The position numbers and the translations under genes are program-made. Source: Vitrella brassicaformis CCMP3155 (lineage: Eukaryota > Protista > Chromerida). From it: a stretch of DNA of 42,127 nt. Within the stretch, counting starts at the first letter, position 1; each line of letters opens with the position of its first letter. The stretch is taken from the NCBI GenBank assembly GCA_001179505.1, contig CDMY01000616.1, positions 1 to 42,127 of the forward strand, in the 5' to 3' direction. This document shows positions 11,721-42,127 of this stretch, in pieces. The notes under the pieces are model-generated. The model had not been told where the DNA came from. It saw only the letters and a list, made by a program, of their open reading frames with translations, and searched no databases.

Positions 11721-14022
11721 TCAGCCGTTGTCAATGACATCTGACGACAGACAAAGAGGACAGACAGGCAGCAATCATGACACACACACATGCACGTGGG
11801 CTTGTTGCAATGCGTGTGTGAGTGAGTCAGCGTGTGTGTACTTTCGACATCCATCGTGACGACATAGGTGGGGACCACATGCTCTCTGACACACTCCTCG
11901 CCAGACGTCCTCTCGTACCCCTGCGTATGCAAAGAAAAGCGATGAGAGACATTGCATGCCGCCCGTGTCTCGTCAGGTTTGTGCGTGCCTGCGGACACGA
12001 GAGCGTCCCCTGGCGAAATATCAGCTGAATGCACTGGCCGCGCTGGTACTCGTAACCTGATGGGAGGCACACACACACACACACACACAATCACACAATC
12101 ACACCAATCGAGTCGGTTGGTGAGTGAGAGCGTCACCTCACCTAGTGGACATGCCACCTCAGGCTCGATCCTCTCCACCTTCACGCATACACCCTCCGCC
12201 AACCGGTCGCCATCAGAGCACTCCTGTCTGTATGGCCGCCTCCTTTGTCGGCAGCATCGGTCCTCACTGGCACCGCAGGTGTGGAAGTCCCGCGGGCACC
12301 TGAACTCGGGCTCCTCGTACGAAACCTCCATGCACTCGGGGATGCCATTGTCCTCATCCACGCCGCCGAGGTCGAATTCGCTGCCTGGCGGGCACTCGAA
12401 CATGGGCATCTCGCGGAGAATCTTCAACACGCACAGACACGAGAAGGTTCGTGCATAGGCAGGCAAGAGACAGGAGGGATCTGTCGCGTCGCCTTTCTCC
12501 TACCTGTATGCAGCTGTCAGGGTCTTCAGGGTCACGAACGAGGCCGGTAGGGCATTTGATGATCATTCGCTGGCAGCCGTCGCCATTCAGCTCGACGGCT
12601 GGCAGGTGCTCGCCATTGAGCTGGCGGTCGCGCTGCGTGTGGATGTCACACCCCACTGTGGCGGGGTACATATTGCGAGACACACAGGACACCTGACCTT
12701 CAACGCGCGACTCCCCATAGCCTTGCAGACAAAGAGCGTGTGTGCATGTAGGTGTCGCAACAACCAGGCCCTTATATAGTTACCTGGCGGGCACTGACGC
12801 TCCAGGGAGAGAGATATCCTCCTGACACACTCGAAATCGCCAGACTCTTGATCCACAAATCCGTCGGGACACGCCAATTGTGGCTCGACGTCCACTGTAT
12901 CGTCCACACAAGTGCTCCCTTCGTCGGTGGTGCTGCATGGACTGGGGGGCGATGCGGAATCTTCGCTGGTGAAAAGGCAGGTGGTCGTTGACTCGACGAG
13001 TGTTGAGCCACGAGGACAGCGCAATTCGCGGCGGCTGAGCTCGACGTCAAAGCACTCACCGTCAGTGAGAAGAGTCGCTGCGACACAGAACGGAGGAACA
13101 CACATACAAAGGGGAGGCATCACGTGGATGTCGCGTCTCTTCCCTCATCGTCTTACCATTGCACACATATAGGGGTTCGATCGTCTCCATCGCCACGCAA
13201 TCGCCGTCTTCGTCGAGTACCCCACCCGCCGCACAGCCAAGCTCTGGCGGCAGCGAGTCGACAGCCACGCAGAAGTCCCCCGACAAAGCACTTTTGTTGA
13301 AGCCATTCGGGCATGGTGGCTCTGCCCCCGGTGTGGCCTTGGCCTTGAGCAGGCACATCCCTCGATGCATGTCATACGGCTCGGGGCAGGTTTTGATGGG
13401 AACACGGGCCACAGACTTGACGCAGACGAGCCCAGAGGCATCCAGGTGCAAGCCCTGCACACAGACAAGGGACATGTGGGACATGTGATCGATATTCAAA
13501 CCACATAATAGGGGCAGGTCTTACTGCAGAGCAGTGGTTCTTCGGCTTGGCAGTGTACACTATCACACAGTCACCGTCACCGTCGTCCCATCCGTCCGGA
13601 CATCCGAGTGAGGGGGGGCTTTCGAACTTCATGACGCACCTGCCCCGCTCCAGGTTATACCCCTGTTCGCAGCTGAGCTCCGCAGCGGCCCACCGTCGCT
13701 CCACACATGCTATCTCCTCGTCATCCGATTCGGCGTTTCGCTCGGCACGAGAGCCCTCGGGACATGTCACCTGACACGTGTGTGAGGGATGGCAACACAC
13801 AAACCGGCAGATCTACCCTTCATTCGGCTCCTTGCCTTCGCAGGCCCGACCCCCACCAACCTGAGGTGGGATGCGGGTCATCTTGACGCATTCGTCTCTC
13901 AGCTCATCCATCTGGTACTTGTCCGGACAAAAGCTTTCCTGGGCGACAGACAGCAGAGCGAAGACGACGGAGACGAGCACCAGAGCGAATATGAAGACAA
14001 CCAACGCCGCCCTCAGCCGCAT
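11721..14022 (-). CDS. Oocyst/cyst wall protein-like (COWP/OWP family), Cys-rich and secreted, multi-exon
   Basis: Signal peptide MRLRAALVVFIFALVLVSVVFALLSVAQ, then tandem CPxG(Y/F)...C repeats (CPEG, CPDGW, CPNGF, CPRG, CPDGF, CPPG, CPLGY, CPQGY) with regular Cys spacing and acidic composition. Ends ...NVIDNG*. Confidence 0.85.
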
Positions 14023-23156: not shown

Positions 23157-24259
23157 ATGGCTGATGACGCCCCTTCGGAGGCCGCCTCCAGTGCGTTCAC
23201 CGCCAACATGGTGGAGATCGTGCAGCGGCAGGCGGACGAGCACAGACACACGCAGCAGCTGTTGGTAGACGAGCTGAAGAGGCAAAGAGACGAGTACAAA
23301 GAGGAGCGAGACGCCTGGAAGCGGCGATGCGAGCAGGCGGAGGCTCAGCTGGCTACGCAGAGGGAGAGCGGCCAGCTGACGCCGCGGACCCTCGTGTGGA
23401 GCGGGGGGCTTTACTACGAGACGGTTTCTCACAACAAGCCACACGGCACTGGAGTCCTGAGGACGCTCGACGGACAGCGCAAGCGATATGAGGGGGCGTG
23501 GAAGGACGGACATTTCGACGGCGAGGGCACCTCCTACCACAGAAACTGCACGAGAGAGTATCAAGGGCAGTTCGCCCGCGGCAATCGTCACGGCTCAGGG
23601 ACGCTGTTCAACAGCGACGGCTCCACTGCGTGCGACGGACAGTGGGCGAACGGCGCGATGGTCGGCGATGGGATTGAGCGCCGCTTGCCTTGGGAAAGCT
23701 GTCACTATGAAGGGCCCCTGCGCAACGGCACACCACACGGCAGCGGGACAGCTCACTGGCCGAAGGGCGGCACGAGTGAGGGGCGGTGGGAGGACGGGCA
23801 AGTGGTCGGCGAGGGGAAGGCGGAGAAGCTCCCCCTGAAGGACGGCAAGACCTACACCGGGCCTCTGCAGGACGGCCTGCCGCACGGGGACGGAGTGAGC
23901 TATTACAACAACAGCCTCAAGTGTTATGAGGGGCAGTGGGAGGGTGGGGGTATGCACGGAATGACACCAGCTACAAGGACTCCCTCTCTCCCACCAAGCA
24001 GTATCAAGGCCAGTGGGAGGACGGCAAGCGGCATGGGAGAGGGACGGTCTATTTCAGTCGGTTGGGCAGTGAATATGTGGTCTTTGAGGGCCAATGGGCT
24101 GAAGGAAAAGCCCAAAGCGGGCGCTTCTTCCCTCATTGGTTCAGCAATTGGTATTGGCCGCCTGCAGCTCGCTTTCCGCCGGGGACCGATCGTAGCAGAA
24201 TTCTCGACAGAGTCAAGAAGGAGCTGGGGCGCATTCCTGAATGGCTGCCAGACGAATGA
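23157..24259 (+). pseudogene. Intronless MORN-repeat protein with N-terminal coiled coil and one frameshift
   Basis: Repeated YEGxWxxGxxHGxG units (YEGAWKDGHFDGEG, YQGQFARGNRHGSG, YTGPLQDGLPHGDG). The repeats continue in a different frame after about 23960 (YQGQWEDGKRHGRG...WLPDE*). Confidence 0.8.
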
Positions 24260-24488
24260 ATGACTGGATCATCGATCACAGAAATCAATGTATTCCTGTC
24301 ACATCACATGAATGTCTCGATGAGAATAATCGACACCCACACGATTGCATAAATATATCCACAGCACACAAGTCGTCCACCATGGCACACACACTTACTG
24401 AGTCCGTCATCTGTCACTCAGTCTCGGCGGCCTCATTCGCCAGCCGCCGCACCATCGCGCGAGAACGAATGTCGGCTTGACGAATCTG
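24149..24488 (+). repeat. Left copy of ~340-bp direct repeat (MORN 3' end, intergenic spacer, orphan EndoV last exon)
   Basis: Aligns by eye to 28881-29214 with about 7 substitutions and 2 indels (5 nt and 1 nt). Confidence 0.95.
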
Positions 24489-24781
24489 ACACACACACAT
24501 ACTCACCGACGAAAAAACATCTGGGCGGCGCGGAGATATTGGCTCTTTCCGAGTAAGAACGAATGAAACAATTTGGAACGCCAACACGTGCGTATGTCTC
24601 GCCATCGACATGCATGTTGCTCACGCAAGGCTTCCTGTATGGGCTTTATCGGTTGGAACATCATGTCTGTTTACGTCTCGGTCCACTCCTCCCTTTTCTC
24701 GTTTCGTTGGCCGCGATAGGTCACAAACAGAAACGTTCAGAGGCAAAAAGGCACATTGAAAGCTGTTGCCTGCCTATTTGA

Positions 24782-27331
24782 CTATCCATCGACAGCTTCC
24801 TGGACGGCAATTGAAAACTCCAGTATCTCGTCTCGGCACAGGATGATTCCCGCCCAAAAGAGCAGCACCACTGCCGCAAACACGGAGACGACTGACGCAC
24901 ACCCAAAATATGCCTTCATCTGCAGACACACACGGGCTCATGACACTACGCACGCCACTTGTGTCGAACGGGACATTCGTGTTTTCACCACGTGGAGTGC
25001 GTTCCGCTCGTTCAAGTCTTTCTCCCCGCGCATCAGAAAGGAAGCCCAGAGGAAGCCTGCCATCAGACATGCACAGAATTCGATCATTTTCGATATTTCA
25101 GTGCTAGCAGGAAGCCACCTGGGATATCACAGCAGAGAGCTGCAACGGGCAGAAAACAGAATGTGCAACCGTATGAGACGCGATAACACAATTGAATGCT
25201 GCAGGTGAGACATGTCACAAACGATGGGATGCAATCCCCATTCATTCCATGAGTAGATCATACATACGTTGAGTTTTCCGCTGGCAGCCGGCTCATCTCG
25301 AGGTTGCATCGGACAGCTCGTGAGGCGCGAAGTGCTGGACCGATAAAACCGAGGAAGACGGCATAGCCGATCGTGACGTAGATGATCCCGAGCACACACC
25401 AGGCCTTCTCGTACAAGCGGAAAGCATGGTCCAGATACAGCAGCCCGACGAACGGCACGGTCACAAGGAAGACGGTCGTATACGCCCAGCCGACGAAAAT
25501 GAATATGCGGTGCAGCAACGAGTCGCCGCCCTGCACGGTCTTCTTCTGCAAGAAACGCAACGCAAGGATGGAAGCACAACACCACAACTAGGGAATCAAC
25601 GATTGATTGAATAGCAGCTCACGATTGCCTCTTCAAAGCGGATGTAACGGAGTTTCCATGCTATCTACATGGGCAAGAGACATGGCATGGCTAGGAGACC
25701 AGATGCTGCCCCCATAGTGTGTGTGTGTGTGTGTGTGTGGCTCACATCCGAGATTGAGGTCTCACGGAGTCCCGGCTGATTGAAGAAATCCCCTAGCAGC
25801 TCGAACTTCACCCTTTGCTCGTCTCCATAGTATTCCTTGAATGTGTCGTTGATAGTGCCGACCACAAACGATGCGTACCAGATGCTGATTGTAAAGGCGC
25901 TGAATGAAAAACGACAAGAGGAAAGACACGTGAAAACATATCTATGAATACGACCCTCCCCCCCAAAGAGGCTACATATCGAAAGCAGCTGATCTGAAGG
26001 GCGATTCATCATCGAAGGGGAAGTACAGAAGGGGCAGGGCTGAAGTGAGAAGAGTCCACCCGAAGATCACCGCCACACCCTTACGGCGAGAGTACGCCTT
26101 TGCTTCCTCCTCCGCCACACTGTCAGCGTGCAACATTTTCTCGTCGTCTGCATACATCAAAATCAGCTGTCCGACGGGAACACTCTCTTCTGACAGCGTC
26201 TCTCCGTCTTTTCGCTGCGCAGCGTCCGCTTCTTGCCTGTCTTTATCGTCCCCGCCCTCTTTGGCCATGTTGCCTTCTTTTGCCTGCTCCTCGCCGTCCC
26301 GTTTAATGCCCGCCTGCGCTCCAACATCCAGCACGACGGCCGCTTTCTCTTCGGTTTCCTTTTCCCTTTTCTCCTTTTCTTCCTCTGACAGACAAACCCG
26401 CACATATGCCATACAAGTATAGCGGATCGTTGGACTTTGCCATACTTGTTTCGAGGCGGTACTTTTTTCTCTCATCCTTCAGAGTGGTTTCACATGTCTC
26501 TCCAGTTGACCTGCCAGGAAACGCTGGGCCAGGGCATGGACAGCAAAGACGGCGTCCCCCGCTGCCAGTTGGCCCCTGGCCGGCGACAGCCAAGTCGCTC
26601 TCTCTGCTGTCTTTGTCGGCTTCCCTTCTTCGTCACTGGGCCCTCCTACTTGCGTTGCCCCCTGCCCTACTTCATCTTCCCCACCACTCAGCTTCTTTCC
26701 GGACGCCTTGCTTTTCTGTGCTGCTGGTGAGGCCTCGTATTTCTCCCTGGTGTCGTCCTTCTTCTTCTCTGCAGTCTCCTTGGTAGTACAAGTGAAGTAG
26801 CCTTTGAGCGGCAGCCAAATCGCGCAACCTTGAACCAAGAGCGCGACGAAAAAGAAAATGGAATGAGCCCCAAGTCCAGCGGAGCCAATGGTCCTGCAGG
26901 TAGAACAAGAGAAAATGCAGCAACAGAGACATGGCGTGCGTCTGATTACGTGAGGCCAAAGAGGAGACAAAACTGGGCAAGCTCCATGAGGGTGATGGCG
27001 GCTTTCTTCAAATTGTCGCGCACCAGGCTCCGGATGCCGGAAATTGTGCAAGTACATTGGATGTTGCCCGTGGAGTCCTCCAGGAGGTTCTCAATGAGGC
27101 CCGTGACAATGGCGAGCAGGGTGAAGGTGAGAAAGAGTGTCCATGGATAGTCCTGAGAATTCAACGCGTGGAGACGCCCATGAAATCATCTACGTACGGC
27201 ATCATGTACCTCATCCACGACGAGAATGGCCCATACGTCCTGCAACAGCATCATAAGCACTGCGTGCAGGTTCATCACATTTGTGGGCTCAATCTCACCT
27301 CGGCCAAGGTCAAAAGCTGCACAAACAGCAT
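24782..27331 (-). CDS. Hypothetical polytopic membrane protein with large acidic/basic loop, about 8-9 exons
   Basis: Phase-consistent exons MLFVQLLTLAE|DVWAILVVDE|DYPWTLFLTF...|TIGSAG...FLA|EEEKEK...AFD|IAFTISIWY...|LWCCASILAL...ENST|WLPASTE...|MKAYFG...AVDG*, with about 10-12 hydrophobic segments. Confidence 0.65.
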
Positions 27332-27569
27332 TATGTTGAAGTCCACGTCGCACCGAGAGGGAGAGGACCTGGAGAGCGCCCCCAGGCCCCCACCGCCGAG
27401 GGACTTTGCCGCCTGTTTGAAGGAACGGGAAACGCCTTCCCGCGCTCCTCGTCACGACAGACGCGGAGCAGGTGCACGTCAAACATCCCCTGCTGTCGTC
27501 CTCTGGCTGGTGAGTCCTTATCTTCCTGTGTGTGGTGTAGGAGCAGCGTGGCACGGTGTGTTTATCGTC

Positions 27570-28594
27570 ATGAGGGGCATGAGGGTGTTCAACCTGAGTG
27601 TGGCGGCCTTGGATTTCATCCCGGTGTGCTTCTTGATCACCGGTAAGCATGCCAATACGGTGATCCAATTAAGGTGCAGCTGCCATGTTGTGCAGGACTG
27701 GCCTACGGCCATGTCGGGACAGTCTACCCTGGTGGCGAACGGCCGGTCAATCGAGGCGGTCCATGGGACGAGACGGATGAAACAGGCATGGGATTCATCG
27801 CAACGGGCATCTGTTTCCTCCTACTCTCCGTGATCTGCAAGTAAGCAAATAAATAGCAGACACCATGTCTCTCTCATATGCGTGATGTGTCTCTCCTGCT
27901 GTGTGTCGTCTATGCGTGTGCTTGTGCCTTTGCAGCCTCTACCTGGCACCACCGATATGATCACGGGAGCAGCGGAAATCACATGCATCGGTCACCTCCT
28001 TCACTTCCTGATATACTGCGCGATGCTGTTGGCCTTTATGATGGGTATGATCATCGGCAGGTTGCTGTGCCTGTGCTGCATCGCCACCTGGTATCCCGAA
28101 AAGTTCGACCTTCGTCGATTCTATACGTGGGGAGCCGATCTGATGGAAGATAACCTCCACTTTTACACTATCCGGGGGGGGGACAGCATAATGGACATCA
28201 ATATGACGGTCCCGGCTCTGCTGCTGAGCAGGCCATTCAAGTGGATCGCAACAGCCTTTTTTCTCGCAGGTAGGATGAACTACTGCCGTGCTATTTCTAC
28301 GCGTTGGGCCACCTTTCAGGCTTCGGCTTTTGGGTCCATTTCGAGAAGCAAATGAATGACGTGTCCCCCAGCACGCTTCTATCGAAGGAAGCGGGCATCA
28401 TCAGTGGGCTTCGTGGAATTAGCGTGAACCACTCTCGTGTCGCGTCTCTCTCTGTTGTGCTCTTTTTTCTGGTTTGTGAAGCAATGTTGGGGATCGGTCT
28501 GACGATCATCTCATTGGTCGCCGAGCATTTGTGGCTAAGATTCGAGTGCGGACCCGAAGCAGACAGGAACGAGCTCGAGGACCTGGACATCTAG
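27570..28594 (+). CDS. Hypothetical multi-pass membrane protein, 4 coding exons
   Basis: MRGMRVFNLSVAALDFIPVCFLITG|LAYGHVG...ICFLLLSVICK|PLPGTTD...AFFLAG|FGFWVHFEKQ...EDLDI*. Donors GTAAGC, GTAAGC and GTAGGA are phase-consistent. The start is approximate. Confidence 0.65.
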
Positions 28595-28880
28595 GCAGTC
28601 GGACAGCCGGACAGTCGCCCTGGAGTCTGTGTCTCTCTGGAGGCGAGATAGATAAGCACTTTAAAAGGCCTCTACCGCTCCATGTATCTATCGAGAGCTT
28701 AGACAGAGAGACCGGTCTTCATACGCAATGGGTGCATGTATGTGCTGAGGCGGTCTTTGTTTGTGCGTCAGTCTGTCTGTCTTCCCCCTAAATCGACTCC
28801 TACTCTGCAAGGAAGTGTGTCAGGGACAGTGGAAAGGGACGGCCGCTTTGACAATGAAGAAATACAGCAGCCGCAGCGAA

Positions 28881-29214
28881 TGGTATTGGCCGCCTGCAGC
28901 TCGCTTTCCGCCAGGGACCGATCGTAGCAGAATCCTCGACAGAGTCAAGAAGGAGCTGGGGCGCATTCCTGAATGGCTGCCAAACGAATGAATGACTGGA
29001 TCATCGATCACGGAAATCAACGTATTCCTGTCACATGAATGTCTCGATGAGAATAATCGACACCACACGATTGCATAAATATATCCACAGCACACAAGTC
29101 GTCCACCATGGCACACACACCTACTGAGTCCGTCATCTGTCACTCAGTCTCGGCGGCCTTATTCGCCAGCCGCCGCACCATCGCGCGAGAACGAATGTCG
29201 GCTTGACGAATCTG
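28881..29214 (+). repeat. Right copy of ~340-bp direct repeat (orphan MORN 3' end plus genuine EndoV last exon)
   Basis: Near-identical to 24149-24488. Confidence 0.95.
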
Positions 29215-29220
29215 CACGTG

Positions 29221-29253
<33 letters not shown>

Positions 29254-30066
29254 CACACACGCGCGCACAGACTGCATGTGTGGAGGGAGAGAGCGTACAG
29301 GATGTTGCTCACCGGTTCGGCCACTCGGTGCTTGGACAGGTGCGGCAGTATCTTCAGGGCGGTGTCGAGCGACACTCGGTGCCCACATGACACGATCAGC
29401 GGCACCGTGGCATCATCCGTCGGCCGATATATCGCCCCCAAGACACCTCGCGTGTCGCCCTTCAGCAAGTGGTGGGAAGGGGCGGTCGTCAGGTGCCGGG
29501 ATGCGAGCTCACGGGCCACCTCCTGACGGAAGGAAAAGCCTGTGTCTGCATCCTCGCTGCAGCGTTGTTCTGCTCACTCTGGTGATGCCATCGACGGTGT
29601 GGATGTTTTTGCTGACCCCAACGGTCGGAATGTCCACAAGGAGCCCGAGATGACAGGCCAGACCAAATCCTGAACATGTCACGCACAGAGAATGAGTGCG
29701 GTCATCATGTGTCACCTCTGTCTGGCTGACCTCTTGGATGGAGTATGCCGTTGCCGTCGACCAGCAGCAGCTGAGGCCACACGGACTCATCAGACGTCGC
29801 CTATGAGACGAAACGCAACGAGGTGTCCGCACTACTTGTGGCACAAGTGGCTGGATGTTCACCTTCATGTCTTCGATCAGTGCAGCGAGTGGAGGCGCCT
29901 CTGCACTCCATCCATAGCACACCCACACAGATGAGATCAGACACCCTCACTTGTCAGACAGAAACGGCCATAGCCCTCTCTGTCCTCTTCCCTTGCCTCT
30001 GAAGGCCAGGTATCCTGGCATGTAGGGCACGTTCAATTCAACCTCGCGGCACCTCTCGTACACAAC

Positions 30067-30795: not shown

Positions 30796-32287
30796 ATGCT
30801 GACCAGCATCTTGGTGCCGCATCTGCCACCGCCGCCACCTGCCTTCTTGGCGCGCGCTCCCATCCCCTCTCCATCTCTCGCCACATCCCCTCATACTATC
30901 CATCACGCGTGCACAAGGCGGCGGCTCCGCTCTCCCTTTGTCCGTCAGCGGCACCCATCTCGGCTTGATGCGGTGTCGGGCCCTGTGCTGCTGCCGCCAA
31001 ACTTCTGGCTGCTGGAGCTGATTGGTCTGTTGGTGCCTTTCATCGTGGCTGTGCTGCCCGCGCTGGAGTACGAGATCAGGACGGGTTTGTTTCCCGTGCA
31101 GAAGGACTTTGGTGTGGACTTCTCGCGGCAAGAGGTCAAGGAGGTGACGCTGAGTGAGCTGTCGGACATTATAGAGATCAGCAAGAAGGAAGACAAAGGT
31201 GAGCAGGGACCCATTCGCAACGGCCACATGCACACCATGGATGGCCTGTGTGTCCTCTGTGTGTGTGCGTGAATGAATGTCTGCAGATCGTGTGGGCAGC
31301 TCTTTCCTGCGGCTGCTGTACATCTCTTCTTATTTCTGGTTCTTCTGGATAAGGACGATCTTCCCCTTCGGCAACGACCACAAGCTCCTGTGTGTCGTCG
31401 CCCCGGCAGTCGACCCCCCGCCTAACCAATCCACCGCAGACGATACCTCCACAAAAGAAAAGACCACTGACAACAGCTACTGGTTCGGCCGTGCGTCATC
31501 CGAGCGGCCCGTTGCGAGAAAGGCAGCCGGCGAGGCGGCAGCCGAGGATGAGCAGCAGCAGCCAGTGAGCGCAGCCGTGGCCACCGATCAACTGACCAGC
31601 GATCGGGCGCTCTCTCTCGCGTTGCCCTTCCCCGCCCCCCTTCCCTCCCACTTGGCCTCGCTGCTGCGGCAGGGCGGCGTCATGTCCTCCCTCAGCCCAT
31701 CGTCTCGAAGGCGGCTGAAGCTCGACCAAGACGGCAGGCGTGTCGACACAAGCCGGCGGAAAAAGGACAAGGAAGGCCCTGCGGACAGGGAGGCGGCGAT
31801 TAAGGAGCGGCATCGGGTGTTGGGTTTTGCTGAGCTGCTGATGCATCCCTTTTCTGGCCGGATGCCCGACTGGGTGCCCGTGCCGATGGTCCTGAAGCAG
31901 GCGCGGTTCGTCATGTCCTCGGCCCTCGCCGTCCTGCTGCCCTTCGTCTCGCAGCCGGAGCCCCTCCACCCCTACATCTGCAACCTGCTGGTGCGTCCTG
32001 AGTGCCGCAGGAAGGGCGTCGGCTCGCGGCTCGTCAAGGGATGCGAGAAGATGGCCGCGGCATTCGGCAGCAACAGCACCACTACTACCAGCACCACCAC
32101 CAGCAGTGGTGATGGTGATTGTGCGCTGTCGCGTGTTGGTGTTCGTAACGACGTGATAGGTTTGCATGCGGAGGAAGACAACGAGAGTGCCATCCAGCTG
32201 TACCTGAAGCTGCGGTACCGCATTGTGGAGAAGGTCGAGTGGAAGGAGAGCAAACTCAAGGTCGTCTACATGATGAAGGACCTCTGA
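30796..32287 (+). CDS. GNAT-family N-acetyltransferase, possibly plastid-targeted
   Basis: YICNLLVRPECRRKGVGSRLV (acetyl-CoA motif A) and LHAEEDNESAIQLYLKLRY (motif B). The N-terminus is Pro/Ser/Arg-rich with an AFL motif. One intron near 31199-31287. The true start is uncertain. Confidence 0.8.
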
Positions 32288-33626: not shown

Positions 33627-36520
33627 ATGTCGGATCTGACTCATCCCGCTGCTGATCTCAAGTGCCTCAAGTGCGGATCTGTTGGCCGGCGAGTCACATG
33701 CCAGCTGTGCGGCGAGATGCTCTACTGCTCAACACGCTGCCTTCGTGAAAATGAAGACGACCATGGGGAGCCGTGTGAGCTCTTCCGCACTCTGGTGAGG
33801 CCGGCCTTCGCCAACACCAACGTCGCCCGGCTGTTTATCGGGTTCCTGGAGATGACCGACTTCCATACCTGTCAGCTAGAGCGCGAGAAGGCTGCCATCG
33901 AGAAGTGCCTCACTAGCGTGAACGGCACAGGGGAGGCCTGTGGTGATCCGACCATTGCTGCAGCTGCATCTGCCGAGATCTCTGAGCCACAGGCTGGCGA
34001 AGTTGATCTGACATTGCGAGGGGCTGCTTTCGGCTCTTGCTTTGGCTTTCACGCTTGCGTGGTGGACGCGACATTCGGAGGCGGTGCAGGTGTTTCTGAG
34101 CTCCCGGCTCTTCGTTTTGTGCCCGTCCTTGACAAGGTCCCCCGTGTGGACTTGCTGCTGCAGTCGCTCGCCAAGGCGGCTGTGCGTGACCTGCAACGGG
34201 CCAAGCTGACGGTTCGGTTCGTCGCTTTCGACCCGCACTTTGAGCCCCAGAACCATTCGCGTCCCTACACACTGGACGGCGTGCCGGTCTTCTCCACCCC
34301 TGACGCCTGCCTGTTGTCTGCCTTGTTCCGCAGCGTTTCCAAGTCCTTCCCGCTCGACAAGTACACCGTGCCGGCGACAGCCTTCCTCAACTGCCCCCCC
34401 AGCTTTGCCGCCTCCATTGGGGCTGTTAAGTGGCCCCGCTTTGTGCGCCATGCGACAGCTGGTCTCCTGGTGCCTTCGCCAGGCGAGCAGTGGGTGGAGG
34501 ATTGGGTGCGGCGCTGTTTGTGGCAGCGACGGATGGACCTAGCGGTGCTGCTTGACGCCAAGGTTGACCAGGACATGGGCAAGCTCAAGGTAGGTAGGGA
34601 AGGAGAGGGCAAAAGAGGGAGGGGCCACCAACTGATATGAACGGCGTGTGTGTCCATTGATTTGCCCGTCTGTCTGCAGAGCAAGGGCAAGGCGATCGAT
34701 GAAAGCGTGCTGGTGGAGCAGCAGCTGGCCCGCCTGCAGAAGGACACTGTGGCCGACTTCATGCGCATCCTCGAGAGGCTCAGGACCGCCGAGCCCATGG
34801 ACATCCATGCCGTCCTCTACGGCACCAATCGACCACTCGGTAGGGCGGCTGCACTCACATGACACAACGTCTCTGACTCACACACAGCGAGGGTGGGTTC
34901 TGCGCCTTCTCGCCATCAGATGCTTCCTTTGCCAGCGGCGACCCAGGTGCTGCTGCCGAGGATGAGCAGGCTGTGTGCGAGCGGCTGGAAGAGGAGATCC
35001 GCCAGGCCAGCGACATGGCTTCGGTCATCACTCGGCTCAAGGAGTTCGAGAAGTCGATTAAGAGCGCACTCGCCGTCAACGTGGGCAGACACACAGGCAG
35101 ATGGCTGGTGGATGGATGGATGGAAGGATGGATGACATACCGGTGTCCCCTGTCTGTGTGTGTGTGCAGGACAATCAGGACCTTTTGGTGCTGGTCTATC
35201 AGCTGGACGTGTATCTGTCCAAGAATGTCGACTTTTACCACTGGGCAGATCTGCTCAAAGTATGGTCCATCGACCCCGGCACAATCACTCACGCTCCGTC
35301 CAACTCCCTCCCTCTCTGCTGCCTGTGCGCCCGTGTCATTCAGGAAAGCACAGGCCTCTGGCGGCTCATCTGCCTCAAGGTCAAGCAGTTCCCTAACAAA
35401 AAGGTCAGCAACACACGTCACGTCACAAAAGGCCATCGACAGTTGGTTGGCGTCAGGGCTTCCTTGTGTGTGTGTGTGGTCAGGTCAAGGAAGAGGCGTG
35501 CAACTTCACCGACAGCATACTGGAGGGATTGGAGTGTGCCCAGCAGATCGCCAACGGCCCTGCACCAAAGGCAAGCTGCCACACAAGGGCGACGCAGACA
35601 GACAGGCAGACACGATACACAGCCACACTCCCTGTCTGTCTGTCTGTCTGTCTGTGTCTGCACACGTGTGTTGTAATGTGTGTGTCAGCGGCCCAAGGTG
35701 TTCCTGGATCTGAACAGCGTGGATGGCAATGGTGGCGAGAGAGTGCGGCGTGTGGTCATCACCCTCTTCACAGACGTCAACCCCAAGGCCGCCAACAACT
35801 TCAGGTGCTACTGCACCGGGGAGAAGGGCGTCGGCACGGAAGGATACCCACTGCACTACAAACGTACATTAGTGACCGATAACACACACACATGCACACA
35901 CAGAGACACACACACAGACAGGCGCTGGAGGAACTTGTGTGTCTTCCTTAAGGTACCATCATCGGCTATGCTGTCAAGGGAACCGACCTGGTGGGCGGCT
36001 ATCTGTCTGACGGCAACTGGACTCACATGACCGACAGCATCTATGGCATGTACCACAGCAAATGGGACCACCGCCGCTCGCTCGTCGCCCCCGGCCGGCC
36101 GGGCGTGGTGTCGCTCATCGGTGAAGCCCCGCCTTCCAAGCGGACCAAGGGCGTCCGCGACTATAAACGGCACGGTAATTACGTCAGTCATCACATGCGT
36201 CACTTTCATGTCAGTCACGTTTCTCATGCATCCCCTCATCCCATGCAGGTGGTCGGTTCCTCATCAGCGTCTCATCGGCCAACTCGGTTCATGTGTACGA
36301 CACGGTGGTCGGGGTCATCGAGGACATCCAGACCATCGCCCACCTGCACAGCATCTCCCTGCTGACCAGGGACGACAGCAGCGCCACCAAGGACAATGGC
36401 AAAGTGGCGACGGACTACGACATGCAGACGGGGCCTCTGTCCTCAACGCCGCCTCTCATTGCACCGGTCATCATCCAGGACTGCGGCCAGCTGCCCGACT
36501 CCGGTGCAATGACTGACTGA
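33627..36520 (+). CDS. zf-MYND protein fused to a C-terminal degenerate cyclophilin-like domain, about 9 exons
   Basis: N-terminus CLKC...CQLC...YCSTRC...H...C. C-terminus RPKVFLDL...[28 protein letters not shown]...PLHYK...SIYG...PGVVSL...RFLI...VIIQDCGQL. Every junction is phase-consistent; one uses a GC donor. Confidence 0.8.
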
Positions 36521-41866: not shown

Positions 41867-42127
41867 ATGCTTACAATCATCATGCTCGCACTCACTCGAG
41901 AGAGTAGAGCAGTAGACTTTAAGAAGTCGGAAACAGACCCGTCCGCTAATTGCTACGATTACCAGCGCGGCCAGTGTATTCAGCTTATATTTCGCCAGGG
42001 GACGCTCTCGTGTCCGCAGGCACGCACAAACCTGACGAGACACGGGCGGCATGCAATGTCTCTCATCACTTTTCCTTGCATACGCAGGGGTATGAGAGGA
42101 CGTCTGGCGAGGAGTGCGTCAGAGAGC
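41867..42127 (+). other. Partial inverted copy of the OWP gene 3' module in an open frame with a new N-terminus; runs off the window
   Basis: 41954-42127 is the reverse complement of 11881-12054 (174 bp, 7 substitutions, no indels). An in-frame ATG at 41867 gives MLTIIMLALTRESRAVD...NCYDYQRGQC...CPQ|GYERTSGEECVRE. Confidence 0.8.

What the first reader, a model, noticed from the sequence alone, without database searches (positions are those of the whole stretch)
24149..29214. 4.4-kb two-gene membrane cassette bracketed by ~340-bp direct repeats of a convergent gene junction
Seen: 24149-24488 and 28881-29214 are about 97% identical. Each contains the MORN stop region (+) and the EndoV last exon (-). 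The left copy completes MORN and the right copy completes EndoV. Between them lies a divergent pair of unknown polytopic membrane genes. Removing one repeat and the interval restores a simple MORN-><-EndoV arrangement. Inference: the insertion duplicated the shared bidirectional 3'-end region, so each cassette gene points into a copied terminator. This suggests integration of a circular DNA by recombination or a microhomology-driven segmental insertion, and the cassette could excise again by recombination. No transposase is present.
Basis: partly seen in the sequence, partly recalled or inferred. Interest (0 to 1): 0.75.

Follow-up and report, generated by a model that had tools for sequence, protein, structure and literature searches.

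The report
Inside-out gene pair between duplicated gene-ends
In the alga Vitrella brassicaformis, a pair of membrane-protein genes sits between the tail ends of two housekeeping genes, with about 345 bases of that junction copied on both sides; the pair is arranged inside-out compared with its relatives elsewhere in the genome, which fits a known but rarely documented route of gene movement through a circular DNA intermediate.

Summary
Window 24142-24488 and 28874-29214 are direct repeats (9 substitutions, two indels) found nowhere else in the 72.7-Mb Vitrella brassicaformis CCMP3155 assembly. Each copy holds the last MORN exon, the shared 3' spacer and the last EndoV exon, with both splice acceptors.

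An assembly artefact is unlikely. The contig has no N, and the longest stretch shared by the copies is 58 nt, below the assembler's k=75.

The 4.4-kb interval holds only gene A (at least 7 hydrophobic spans) and gene B (at least 4, transcribed), with no transposase. Both belong to a family found only in this species. Three other loci carry the unit as B-> <-A (tail to tail); here it is <-A B-> (a circular permutation).

A second family unit, on contig C263, is bracketed by its own unrelated private 156-bp repeat. The scan noted similar repeat-bracketed cassettes elsewhere in this genome.

Best reading: a permuted family unit was inserted without a transposase, through a circle or from inside a tandem array, and the target was duplicated during repair.

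The age is unresolved. The genes are about 50% identical to their paralogs, whereas the repeat is 97% identical, so this is either a recent relocation or gene conversion.

Both cassette genes show 5' damage. This is a new member of a known kind, of moderate interest.

The parts
23157..23943 (+). MORN-repeat gene, first coding exon of the annotated model
   Evidence: Pfam MORN E=5.9e-13. Exon 1 plus the last exon translate exactly to annotated protein P0008.
23944..24167 (+). Annotated last MORN intron (224 nt, GT-AG). It contains about 70 open MORN-like codons in phase with the last exon.
   Evidence: donor GAGG|GT, acceptor CTGCAG|CT, and an open frame-b reading frame over 23936-24259.
24142..24488 (.). 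R-left, the left copy of the direct-repeat core
   Evidence: Only two copies exist in the genome.
24168..24259 (+). Functional last exon of MORN (ends ...IPEWLPDE, then stop), wholly inside R-left
24414..24485 (-). Redundant copy of the EndoV last exon (one change, K to E), with its CAG acceptor, inside R-left
24489..24624 (-). Degenerate copy of the EndoV last intron: an (AC)n run next to the acceptor, a diverged interior, and an 11-nt match to the 5' splice site (GTGAGCAACAT). It could act as a 3'-UTR intron of gene A (inferred).
   Evidence: P is about 0.05 once the microsatellite is excluded.
24782..27486 (-). Gene A, a polytopic membrane protein of a Vitrella-only family. The stop is at 24782-24784 and conserved coding runs to about 27364. 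The start codon is uncertain because the ATG conserved in the closest paralogs is missing.
   Evidence: Exon blocks are collinear with four paralogs. At least 7 hydrophobic spans. N-terminus compared. No Pfam family. Only Vitrella hits among 1.84e9 representatives.
27365..27569 (.). Head-to-head spacer between A and B, the putative circle-closure or array joint
   Evidence: No detectable similarity to the paralogs' 5' flanks.
27570..28594 (+). Gene B, a polytopic membrane protein, transcribed. A 4-nt shortfall at the start of exon 3 (27936-27959) closes the exon 1-2 frame at a TGA that overlaps the ATG of the expressed 195-aa product.
   Evidence: Transcript-derived proteins P0006 and P0007 are 100% identical. 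Frameshift shown against three paralogs. At least 4 hydrophobic spans.
28795..28843 (+). Weak MORN-like remnant (...CQGQWKG...) upstream of R-right, in phase with the copied last exon. It is a possible decayed outer part of the original duplication.
   Evidence: 37 of 48 nt identical to 23978-24025. Fraction of shuffles reaching the score: 0.004-0.008. Controls not significant.
28874..29214 (.). R-right, the right copy of the direct-repeat core
28900..28991 (+). Redundant copy of the MORN last exon with its acceptor (D to N change near the end), inside R-right
29140..29211 (-). Functional last exon of endonuclease V (IRQADIRSRAMVRRLANKAAETE, then stop)
   Evidence: The preceding exon matches Pfam Endonuclease_5 positions 146-193 of 198.
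29212..29312 (-). Last EndoV intron (GTGAGC...CAG), containing an (AC)n/(GT)n microsatellite

Best explanation
The structure is genuine. MORN and EndoV once lay tail to tail and shared one 3' spacer. A two-gene unit of a Vitrella-specific membrane-protein family was inserted into that spacer by a process that needed no transposase.

The unit arrived as a circular permutation of the family's normal B-><-A arrangement. The simplest route is a circularised unit opened in its own 3'-3' spacer. The break in the target was repaired so that a stretch of the junction ended up on both sides. That stretch covers both terminal exons, their acceptors and the intergenic DNA: 345 bp at 97% identity today, and possibly 0.5 kb or more originally. 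In effect it is a very long target-site duplication, made by staggered breaks with fill-in or by replicative template switching.

As a result MORN and EndoV stay intact, and gene A now runs into a copy of the EndoV 3' end while gene B runs into a copy of the MORN 3' end.

Shown: the repeat, its content and its uniqueness; the permutation relative to three other family loci; a second family locus with its own private flanking repeat; the absence of transposase and terminal inverted repeats.

Inferred: the circular intermediate, the repair mechanism, and the use of the copied 3' ends by A and B.

Unresolved: the age. Either the unit moved recently without leaving a donor copy, or the insertion is old and the core is kept alike by gene conversion.
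For: - Repeat confirmed and private to this locus.
- Both copies hold the same MORN-3'/EndoV-3' fusion, so the adjacency came first. The core runs from 19-26 nt before the MORN last-exon acceptor to 3 nt beyond the EndoV last-exon acceptor.
- Assembly support: no N in the contig; the longest stretch shared by the copies is 58 nt, below Velvet's k=75; no 75-mer in the window occurs twice (assembly method from PMC4501334). No second, empty-site contig exists in the assembly.
- Gene order: units at C263 and at two places on C277 are B-><-A, with 250-640 bp between the stop codons. The window has <-A B->, with about 84-200 bp between the 5' ends and 293 + 279 bp of 3' flank.
- The C263 unit is bracketed by its own private repeat of 156-161 bp (147 matches, 8 mismatches, 7 gap columns) that encloses exactly the unit.
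- Cassette GC is 53.4%, like the paralogous units (51-54%) and below the flanks (58%).
- No transposase, recombinase or RNA genes, and no terminal inverted repeats.
- The order-flip signature is the published hallmark of circular intermediates (PMC7450558).
Against: - No donor copy exists. All five A copies are about 45-52% identical in protein and about 60% in DNA, so the permutation is shown against old paralogs, not against the true source.
- An internal <-A B-> piece of a tandem array would give the same order, and C277 is such an array.
- The junctions carry only weak microhomology, which does not separate end joining from template switching.
- The closure joint has no recognisable homology to any paralog flank.
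Confidence: 0.5

Rival explanations
1. There was no circle. A replication fork or broken end in the MORN/EndoV spacer switched template into a tandem array of family units, copied the inner <-A B-> part, and switched back a few hundred bases behind its point of departure. That re-copied the junction (an MMBIR/FoSTeS-type insertion with a flanking duplication).
For: - C277 is a tandem array of units inside a ~10-kb segmental duplication. It also holds a truncated CCT gene copy and a pasted 235-bp gene-B snippet, both signs of error-prone copying at this family's loci.
- The right edge of R lies in an (AC)n run, and the left edge at a short CAGC repeat.
- Scan notes on this genome read similar structures as repair or copying scars (unverified leads).
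Against: - In the only array seen, A and the next B are 2.7 kb apart. In the window they are about 0.1-0.2 kb apart.
- No extant array member is close to the window's genes.
Confidence: 0.25
2. The insertion is old, of the order of the family's diversification. The duplicated target was originally longer. Its outer intronic parts have decayed, and the 345-bp core is kept near-identical by gene conversion between the direct repeats. This rival concerns the age of the event and is compatible with either insertion route.
For: - The cassette genes are about 50% identical to all paralogs, while the core is 97% identical.
- Weak collinear homology lies outside the core: 23978-24025 against 28795-28843 (37 of 48 nt; shuffle fraction 0.004-0.008), and the 11-mer at the EndoV intron 5' splice site (24614-24624 = 29302-29312; about 0.05).
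- The core ends exactly where length differences begin: an 84-nt difference on one side and a microsatellite on the other.
- Only 2 synonymous differences occur in the redundant MORN exon copy.
Against: - The outer homology is short, and the tests were chosen after looking at the data.
- The C263 repeat has no such outer homology.
- Recombination frequent enough to homogenise direct repeats should also delete the interval. The cassette looks partly decayed: B is frameshifted and A lacks its usual start.
Confidence: 0.4
3. Campbell-type integration: a circle that already carried a copy of R recombined homologously with the chromosomal R.
For: The product, R-insert-R with a permuted insert, is exactly what a single crossover gives (structure).
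Against: - Nothing explains how a family unit would have acquired the MORN/EndoV junction.
- Other units have unrelated spacers.
- R exists only at this locus.
- The C263 unit has a different private repeat. That fits target duplication at each site, not a repeat carried along.
Confidence: 0.04
4. Assembly artefact: the two copies are alleles, or mis-joined or mis-filled sequence.
For: The assembly was made from short reads with scaffolding and two gap-filling steps (PMC4501334). No read-level data could be examined.
Against: - No N in the contig.
- The copies differ at 9 sites plus two indels and share no 75-mer, so a k=75 graph separates them.
- Each copy has unique DNA on both sides.
- MORN and EndoV are each completed only by their own copy.
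- No empty-site contig exists.
- Gene B at this locus is matched 100% by independent transcript-derived proteins.
Confidence: 0.03

Closest known systems
Segmental duplications or translocations through circular DNA intermediates: human cSDPs (Chicote et al. 2020, PMC7450558) and the cattle KIT colour-sidedness translocations cited there
   Same: The block order is flipped between the copy and its relatives without inversion of the blocks. The breakpoints show no long homology. The location is dispersed, not tandem. No transposase is involved.
   Different: Here the blocks are two whole genes in a 4.4-kb unit, not tens to hundreds of kb. No donor of high identity is known. The target carries a 345-bp duplication, whereas the published cases report indels of 1-13 bp and microhomologies.
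MMBIR/FoSTeS template-switch insertions (replicative repair)
   Same: An inserted segment is flanked by a duplication of the acceptor site. Breakpoints lie at a microsatellite and at short repeats. Patchwork copying occurs at related loci.
   Different: Only one clean insert is present, and no templated snippets were demonstrated at the joints. The mechanism cannot be told from sequence alone.
Campbell-type single-crossover integration of a circle
   Same: The product has the same topology: direct repeats flank a permuted insert.
   Different: It requires prior homology on the circle, and there is no sign of that here.
Formation of extrachromosomal circles by recombination between direct repeats (Leishmania amplicons, yeast CUP1 circles; from my own knowledge, with CUP1 mentioned in PMC7450558)
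   Same: R-cassette-R is the kind of substrate that can pop out as a circle carrying one repeat.
   Different: No circle, copy-number change or empty site has been observed here. This is a prediction only.
Target-site duplications of DNA transposons and retroelements
   Same: A direct duplication of host sequence sits on both sides of an insert.
   Different: Transposon duplications are 2-20 bp and of fixed length for each family. Here they are 345 bp and 156 bp at two loci, with no terminal inverted repeats, no LTRs and no transposase or integrase.

Membership tests
Circular-intermediate segmental duplication (cSDP type) | Order flip (A-B to B-A) between source and derivative, with each block keeping its orientation | tested here: met
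   The window has <-A B->, against B-> <-A at C263 and twice on C277. This is shown against old paralogs, not against the true donor.
Circular-intermediate segmental duplication (cSDP type) | An identifiable ancestral (donor) locus of high identity | tested here: not met
   The best paralog is about 52% identical in protein and about 61-63% in DNA. No close copy exists in the assembly.
Circular-intermediate segmental duplication (cSDP type) | Breakpoints with only microhomology or short indels, and no long homology | tested here: inconclusive
   There is a CAGC at the left edge and an (AC)n run at the right edge. However, the acceptor site carries a 345-bp duplication that is not described for that class.
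DNA transposon | Terminal inverted repeats at the insert ends | tested here: not met
   No inverted repeat lies at the cassette ends.
DNA transposon | A transposase (or recombinase) encoded in the element or recognisable in it | tested here: not met
   Pfam scans of all long ORFs in six frames gave no such hit.
DNA transposon | A short target-site duplication of fixed length | tested here: not met
   The duplications are 345 bp here and 156 bp at C263.
Campbell-type homologous integration | The incoming circle carries a copy of the target repeat | tested here: not met
   R occurs only at this locus. The spacers of other units are unrelated to it.
Assembly duplication artefact | The copies are identical or share k-mers of at least the assembler's k, so the graph is ambiguous | tested here: not met
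   The longest shared run is 58 nt, below k=75, and no 75-mer is repeated (k from PMC4501334).
MMBIR/FoSTeS insertion | A replicative origin shown by templated joints or a retained donor | not testable with these tools
   This needs the donor locus, or population or long-read data.

The most novel reading that the evidence does not exclude
Vitrella has a recurrent, transposase-independent way of moving gene cassettes. A cassette leaves as a circle and re-enters elsewhere with a target duplication of 150-350 bp (or longer). Those new direct repeats then prime the next excision. The A/B unit would be one such roaming cassette: two of its five loci carry private flanking repeats and opposite permutations. 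The other repeat-bracketed cassettes noted by the scan in this genome would be further products of the same process.
Probability: 0.12. Interest if true: 0.75.

Novelty: new member of a known kind. Interest (0 to 1): 0.42.

Why it matters
How dispersed, non-retro gene duplicates and relocations arise is still poorly documented outside mammals. This locus offers a compact, fully sequenced example with three informative scars: a permuted gene order, a long duplication of the target, and a putative closure joint. The host is a culturable relative of the apicomplexan parasites.

The target duplication copied whole terminal exons with their splice acceptors and 3' ends. It therefore also shows how an inserted gene can immediately acquire ready-made 3' processing signals.

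If the same architecture at C263 and the other noted loci reflects one mechanism, Vitrella would be a practical system for testing circle-mediated gene movement by PCR and long reads.

Tried and rejected
- Third analogue. I first took the 190-235-bp gene-B fragment on C277 (43590-43824) and B3 as another "insert between target duplications". blastn showed that the region belongs to a ~10-kb tandem segmental duplication with a truncated CCT gene copy, so I dropped it.
- MORN intron boundary. I first placed the 23978-24025 match at a MORN intron-exon boundary. The annotated model shows it lies inside the annotated last intron, in an open MORN-like frame.
- Bacterial promoter and terminator scan: irrelevant for a eukaryote.
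- Function of A and B. Pfam found nothing. The ESM Atlas gave no usable hit. The AlphaFold model of P0006 had pLDDT 51, so I ran no fold search.
- Orthologous or empty-site loci.
- Base rate of private direct repeats. In the 96 kb I held, the only direct repeats of at least 100 bp and at least 85% identity are R, the C263 repeat and the C277 segmental duplication.
- Non-coding similarity. None was found between the cassette's spacer or 3' flanks and the paralogs' flanks.
- Spliced models. Models of A and B were never joined or searched; exons were handled one by one, by reference. The only joining was an in-script equality check of the two MORN exons against the annotated protein P0008.
Full report
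**Organism and sequence.** The window is the whole contig C616 (42,127 bp, no N) of a 72,700,666-bp assembly in 1064 pieces. Source names attached to proteins from this genome identify it as Vitrella brassicaformis CCMP3155. The size and piece count match the published assembly (PMC4501334).

**The observation.**
- A local alignment places the repeat at 24142-24488 and 28874-29214. The core has 9 substitutions, a 5-bp indel and a 1-bp indel.
- A DNA search of the whole assembly finds only these two copies.
- Joining the two MORN exons (23157-23943 and 24168-24259) in a script reproduces the annotated protein P0008 exactly. The last MORN exon and its acceptor therefore lie inside R-left.
- The last EndoV exon (29140-29211, minus strand) lies inside R-right. 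It follows an exon that matches Pfam Endonuclease_5 up to position 193 of 198.
- The core starts 19-26 nt before the MORN acceptor and ends 3 nt past the EndoV acceptor. It is therefore essentially the two terminal exons plus the shared 3' spacer.
- Each copy also carries the other gene's terminal exon as a redundant copy. Each redundant copy has one amino-acid change: D to N in the MORN copy and K to E in the EndoV copy.

**Is it an artefact?** The assembly was made with Velvet at k=75, followed by scaffolding, gap filling and a REAPR check. Several results argue against an artefact:
- The longest exact run shared by the two copies is 58 nt, and no 75-mer in the window occurs twice. A k=75 graph therefore separates the copies.
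- Each copy has unique DNA on both sides, and there is no empty-site contig.
- Gene B inside the cassette is matched at 100% by two transcript-derived proteins from independent sources, JGI and MMETSP.

**The cassette.** The 4,385-bp interval is filled by two genes.
- Gene A (minus strand; stop at 24782-24784; conserved coding up to about 27364) has at least 7 hydrophobic spans.
- Gene B (plus strand, 27570-28594) has at least 4 hydrophobic spans.
- Neither gene, nor any paralog piece, matches a Pfam family. No other ORF in the cassette matches anything, and there are no RNA genes.
- A profile of the best-conserved A block, searched against 1.84 billion representatives, returned only two true hits, both annotated Vitrella models of paralogs. 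The family is specific to this lineage as far as HMMER can see.
- Cassette GC (53.4%) equals that of the paralogous units (51-54%) and is below the flanks (58%), so the DNA is native.

**The new evidence: gene order.**
- Gene A has four paralogs: C263, C512 and two on C277. B-like genes sit next to three of them.
- In all three cases the unit is B-> <-A, tail to tail, with 250-640 bp between the stop codons. In the window the order is <-A B->, head to head, with only about 84-200 bp between the 5' ends. The 3' flanks are 293 and 279 bp, which together resemble one tail-to-tail spacer.
- An inversion cannot turn one arrangement into the other. A circular permutation can. That could be a circularised unit opened in its 3'-3' spacer, or the inner part of a tandem array.
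- The same order flip is the published hallmark of segmental duplication through circular intermediates (PMC7450558).

**A second case in the same family.** The C263 unit is bracketed by its own direct repeat: 30849-31004 and 36082-36242, with 147 matches, 8 mismatches, 7 gap columns and sharp edges. That repeat is unrelated to R, occurs nowhere else in the genome, and encloses exactly the unit (5,077 bp). So two of the five family loci carry private target-type duplications, and they have opposite permutations.

The scan's notebook lists further repeat-bracketed cassettes in this genome. These include one flanked by 254-bp repeats and one flanked by about 135-bp repeats between two convergent housekeeping genes. 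They are unverified leads and I did not test them. They suggest the architecture is a general product of how this genome inserts DNA, not a property of this family alone. In the 96 kb I held, the only comparable repeats are R, the C263 repeat and a C277 segmental duplication.

**Age.**
- All five A copies are about equally distant from each other: 45-52% protein identity and about 60% DNA identity in the conserved blocks. Non-coding DNA between paralogous loci cannot be aligned.
- The repeat cores, in contrast, are about 97% (window) and about 91-95% (C263) identical.
- One reading is that the units moved to their present sites long after they diverged and left no donor. The other is that the insertions are old and the repeats are homogenised by gene conversion.
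- For the window there is modest support for the second reading. A 48-nt stretch upstream of R-right matches MORN-like sequence upstream of R-left (37 of 48 nt; shuffle fraction 0.004-0.008; controls not significant). An exact 11-mer at the 5' splice site of the EndoV last intron recurs, collinear, beyond R-left (about 0.05 when the shared microsatellite is excluded).
- The core ends exactly where length differences begin, as expected for a conversion tract.
- Two points count against the second reading. The C263 repeat has no such outer homology. Recombination active enough to homogenise direct repeats should also delete a dispensable interval.

I leave the age open.

**State of the cassette genes.**
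- Gene B is transcribed. With the donor and acceptor conserved in all three paralogs, its exon 1-2 frame runs into a TGA, because the start of exon 3 is 4 nt shorter than in the paralogs. The stop overlaps the ATG at which the transcript-derived protein P0006 begins, so the first two membrane spans are cut off.
- A second transcript-derived protein (P0007) skips one hydrophobic segment.
- Gene A keeps every conserved block open. However, it lacks the ATG that its closest paralogs have just upstream of the CD.EFNI motif.
- Both defects lie towards the 5' ends, next to the putative closure joint.

**Mechanism and rivals.**
- I favour insertion of a circularised family unit, with a long target duplication made during repair (confidence 0.5).
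- Copying of an inner array segment by template switching, without a circle, is the main rival (0.25). C277 shows that such arrays and patchwork copying exist at this family's loci.
- Homologous (Campbell-type) integration is unlikely, because nothing suggests a circle carried R.
- A classical transposon is excluded by the missing terminal inverted repeats and transposase and by duplications of 156 and 345 bp.
- An artefact is unlikely.

**Comparison with the known, and verdict.** The locus works like the circular-intermediate or MMBIR class of dispersed segmental duplication. It fails one membership feature of that class, an identifiable donor, and it differs in having a long target duplication. 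I file it as a new member of a known kind. It is a clean, small natural example in a chromerid alga and of moderate interest. The more novel reading, a recurrent recombination-driven cassette movement, is not excluded and has a low probability.

Noticed in passing
L030:2350-2505 and L030:7583-7743 (= C263:30849-31004 and 36082-36242): A second family unit (B-> <-A) is bracketed by its own private direct repeat of 156-161 bp, about 91-95% identical, with sharp edges. The repeat is found nowhere else in the genome.
   Followed up: yes
C277:41370-44911 against C277:51475-56815 (L025, L027, L031): A ~10-kb tandem segmental duplication carries the two C277 units. Its first copy ends in a truncated 5' copy of a CCT/TCP-1 chaperonin gene, 90% identical to the full gene at about 55.7-58.1 kb. 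It also contains a 235-bp snippet of gene B exon 1 (43590-43824), pasted where the second copy has only about 30 bp.
   Followed up: partly
window 23936-24259: The annotated last MORN intron (23944-24167) contains about 70 open codons of MORN-repeat-like sequence in phase with the last exon. No canonical intron joins the upstream frame to it. This could be a recent intronisation, a frameshift bypassed by the annotation, or a base error.
   Followed up: partly
window 27936-27959: In gene B, the stop of the exon 1-2 frame overlaps the ATG of the expressed downstream ORF (ATGA). The gene could therefore yield a roughly 80-aa two-span peptide and a 195-aa protein from one transcript.
   Followed up: partly
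C512:about 41000-42650 (L024), protein P0002: The annotated model fuses a protein-kinase domain (Pfam Pkinase, E=1.4e-35) to the N-terminal part of the C512 gene A paralog. This is either a real fusion or a merged gene model. No B gene was seen at that locus.
   Followed up: no
window 11881-12054 and 41954-42127: A 174-nt inverted repeat, 96% complementary and 30 kb apart, with one arm at the very end of the contig. The scan noted it separately.
   Followed up: no
window 28319-28594, protein P0007: An MMETSP transcript-derived protein of gene B skips the segment SGLRGISVNHSRVASLSVVLFFLVCEA. This is an alternative splice that removes most of one hydrophobic span.
   Followed up: no
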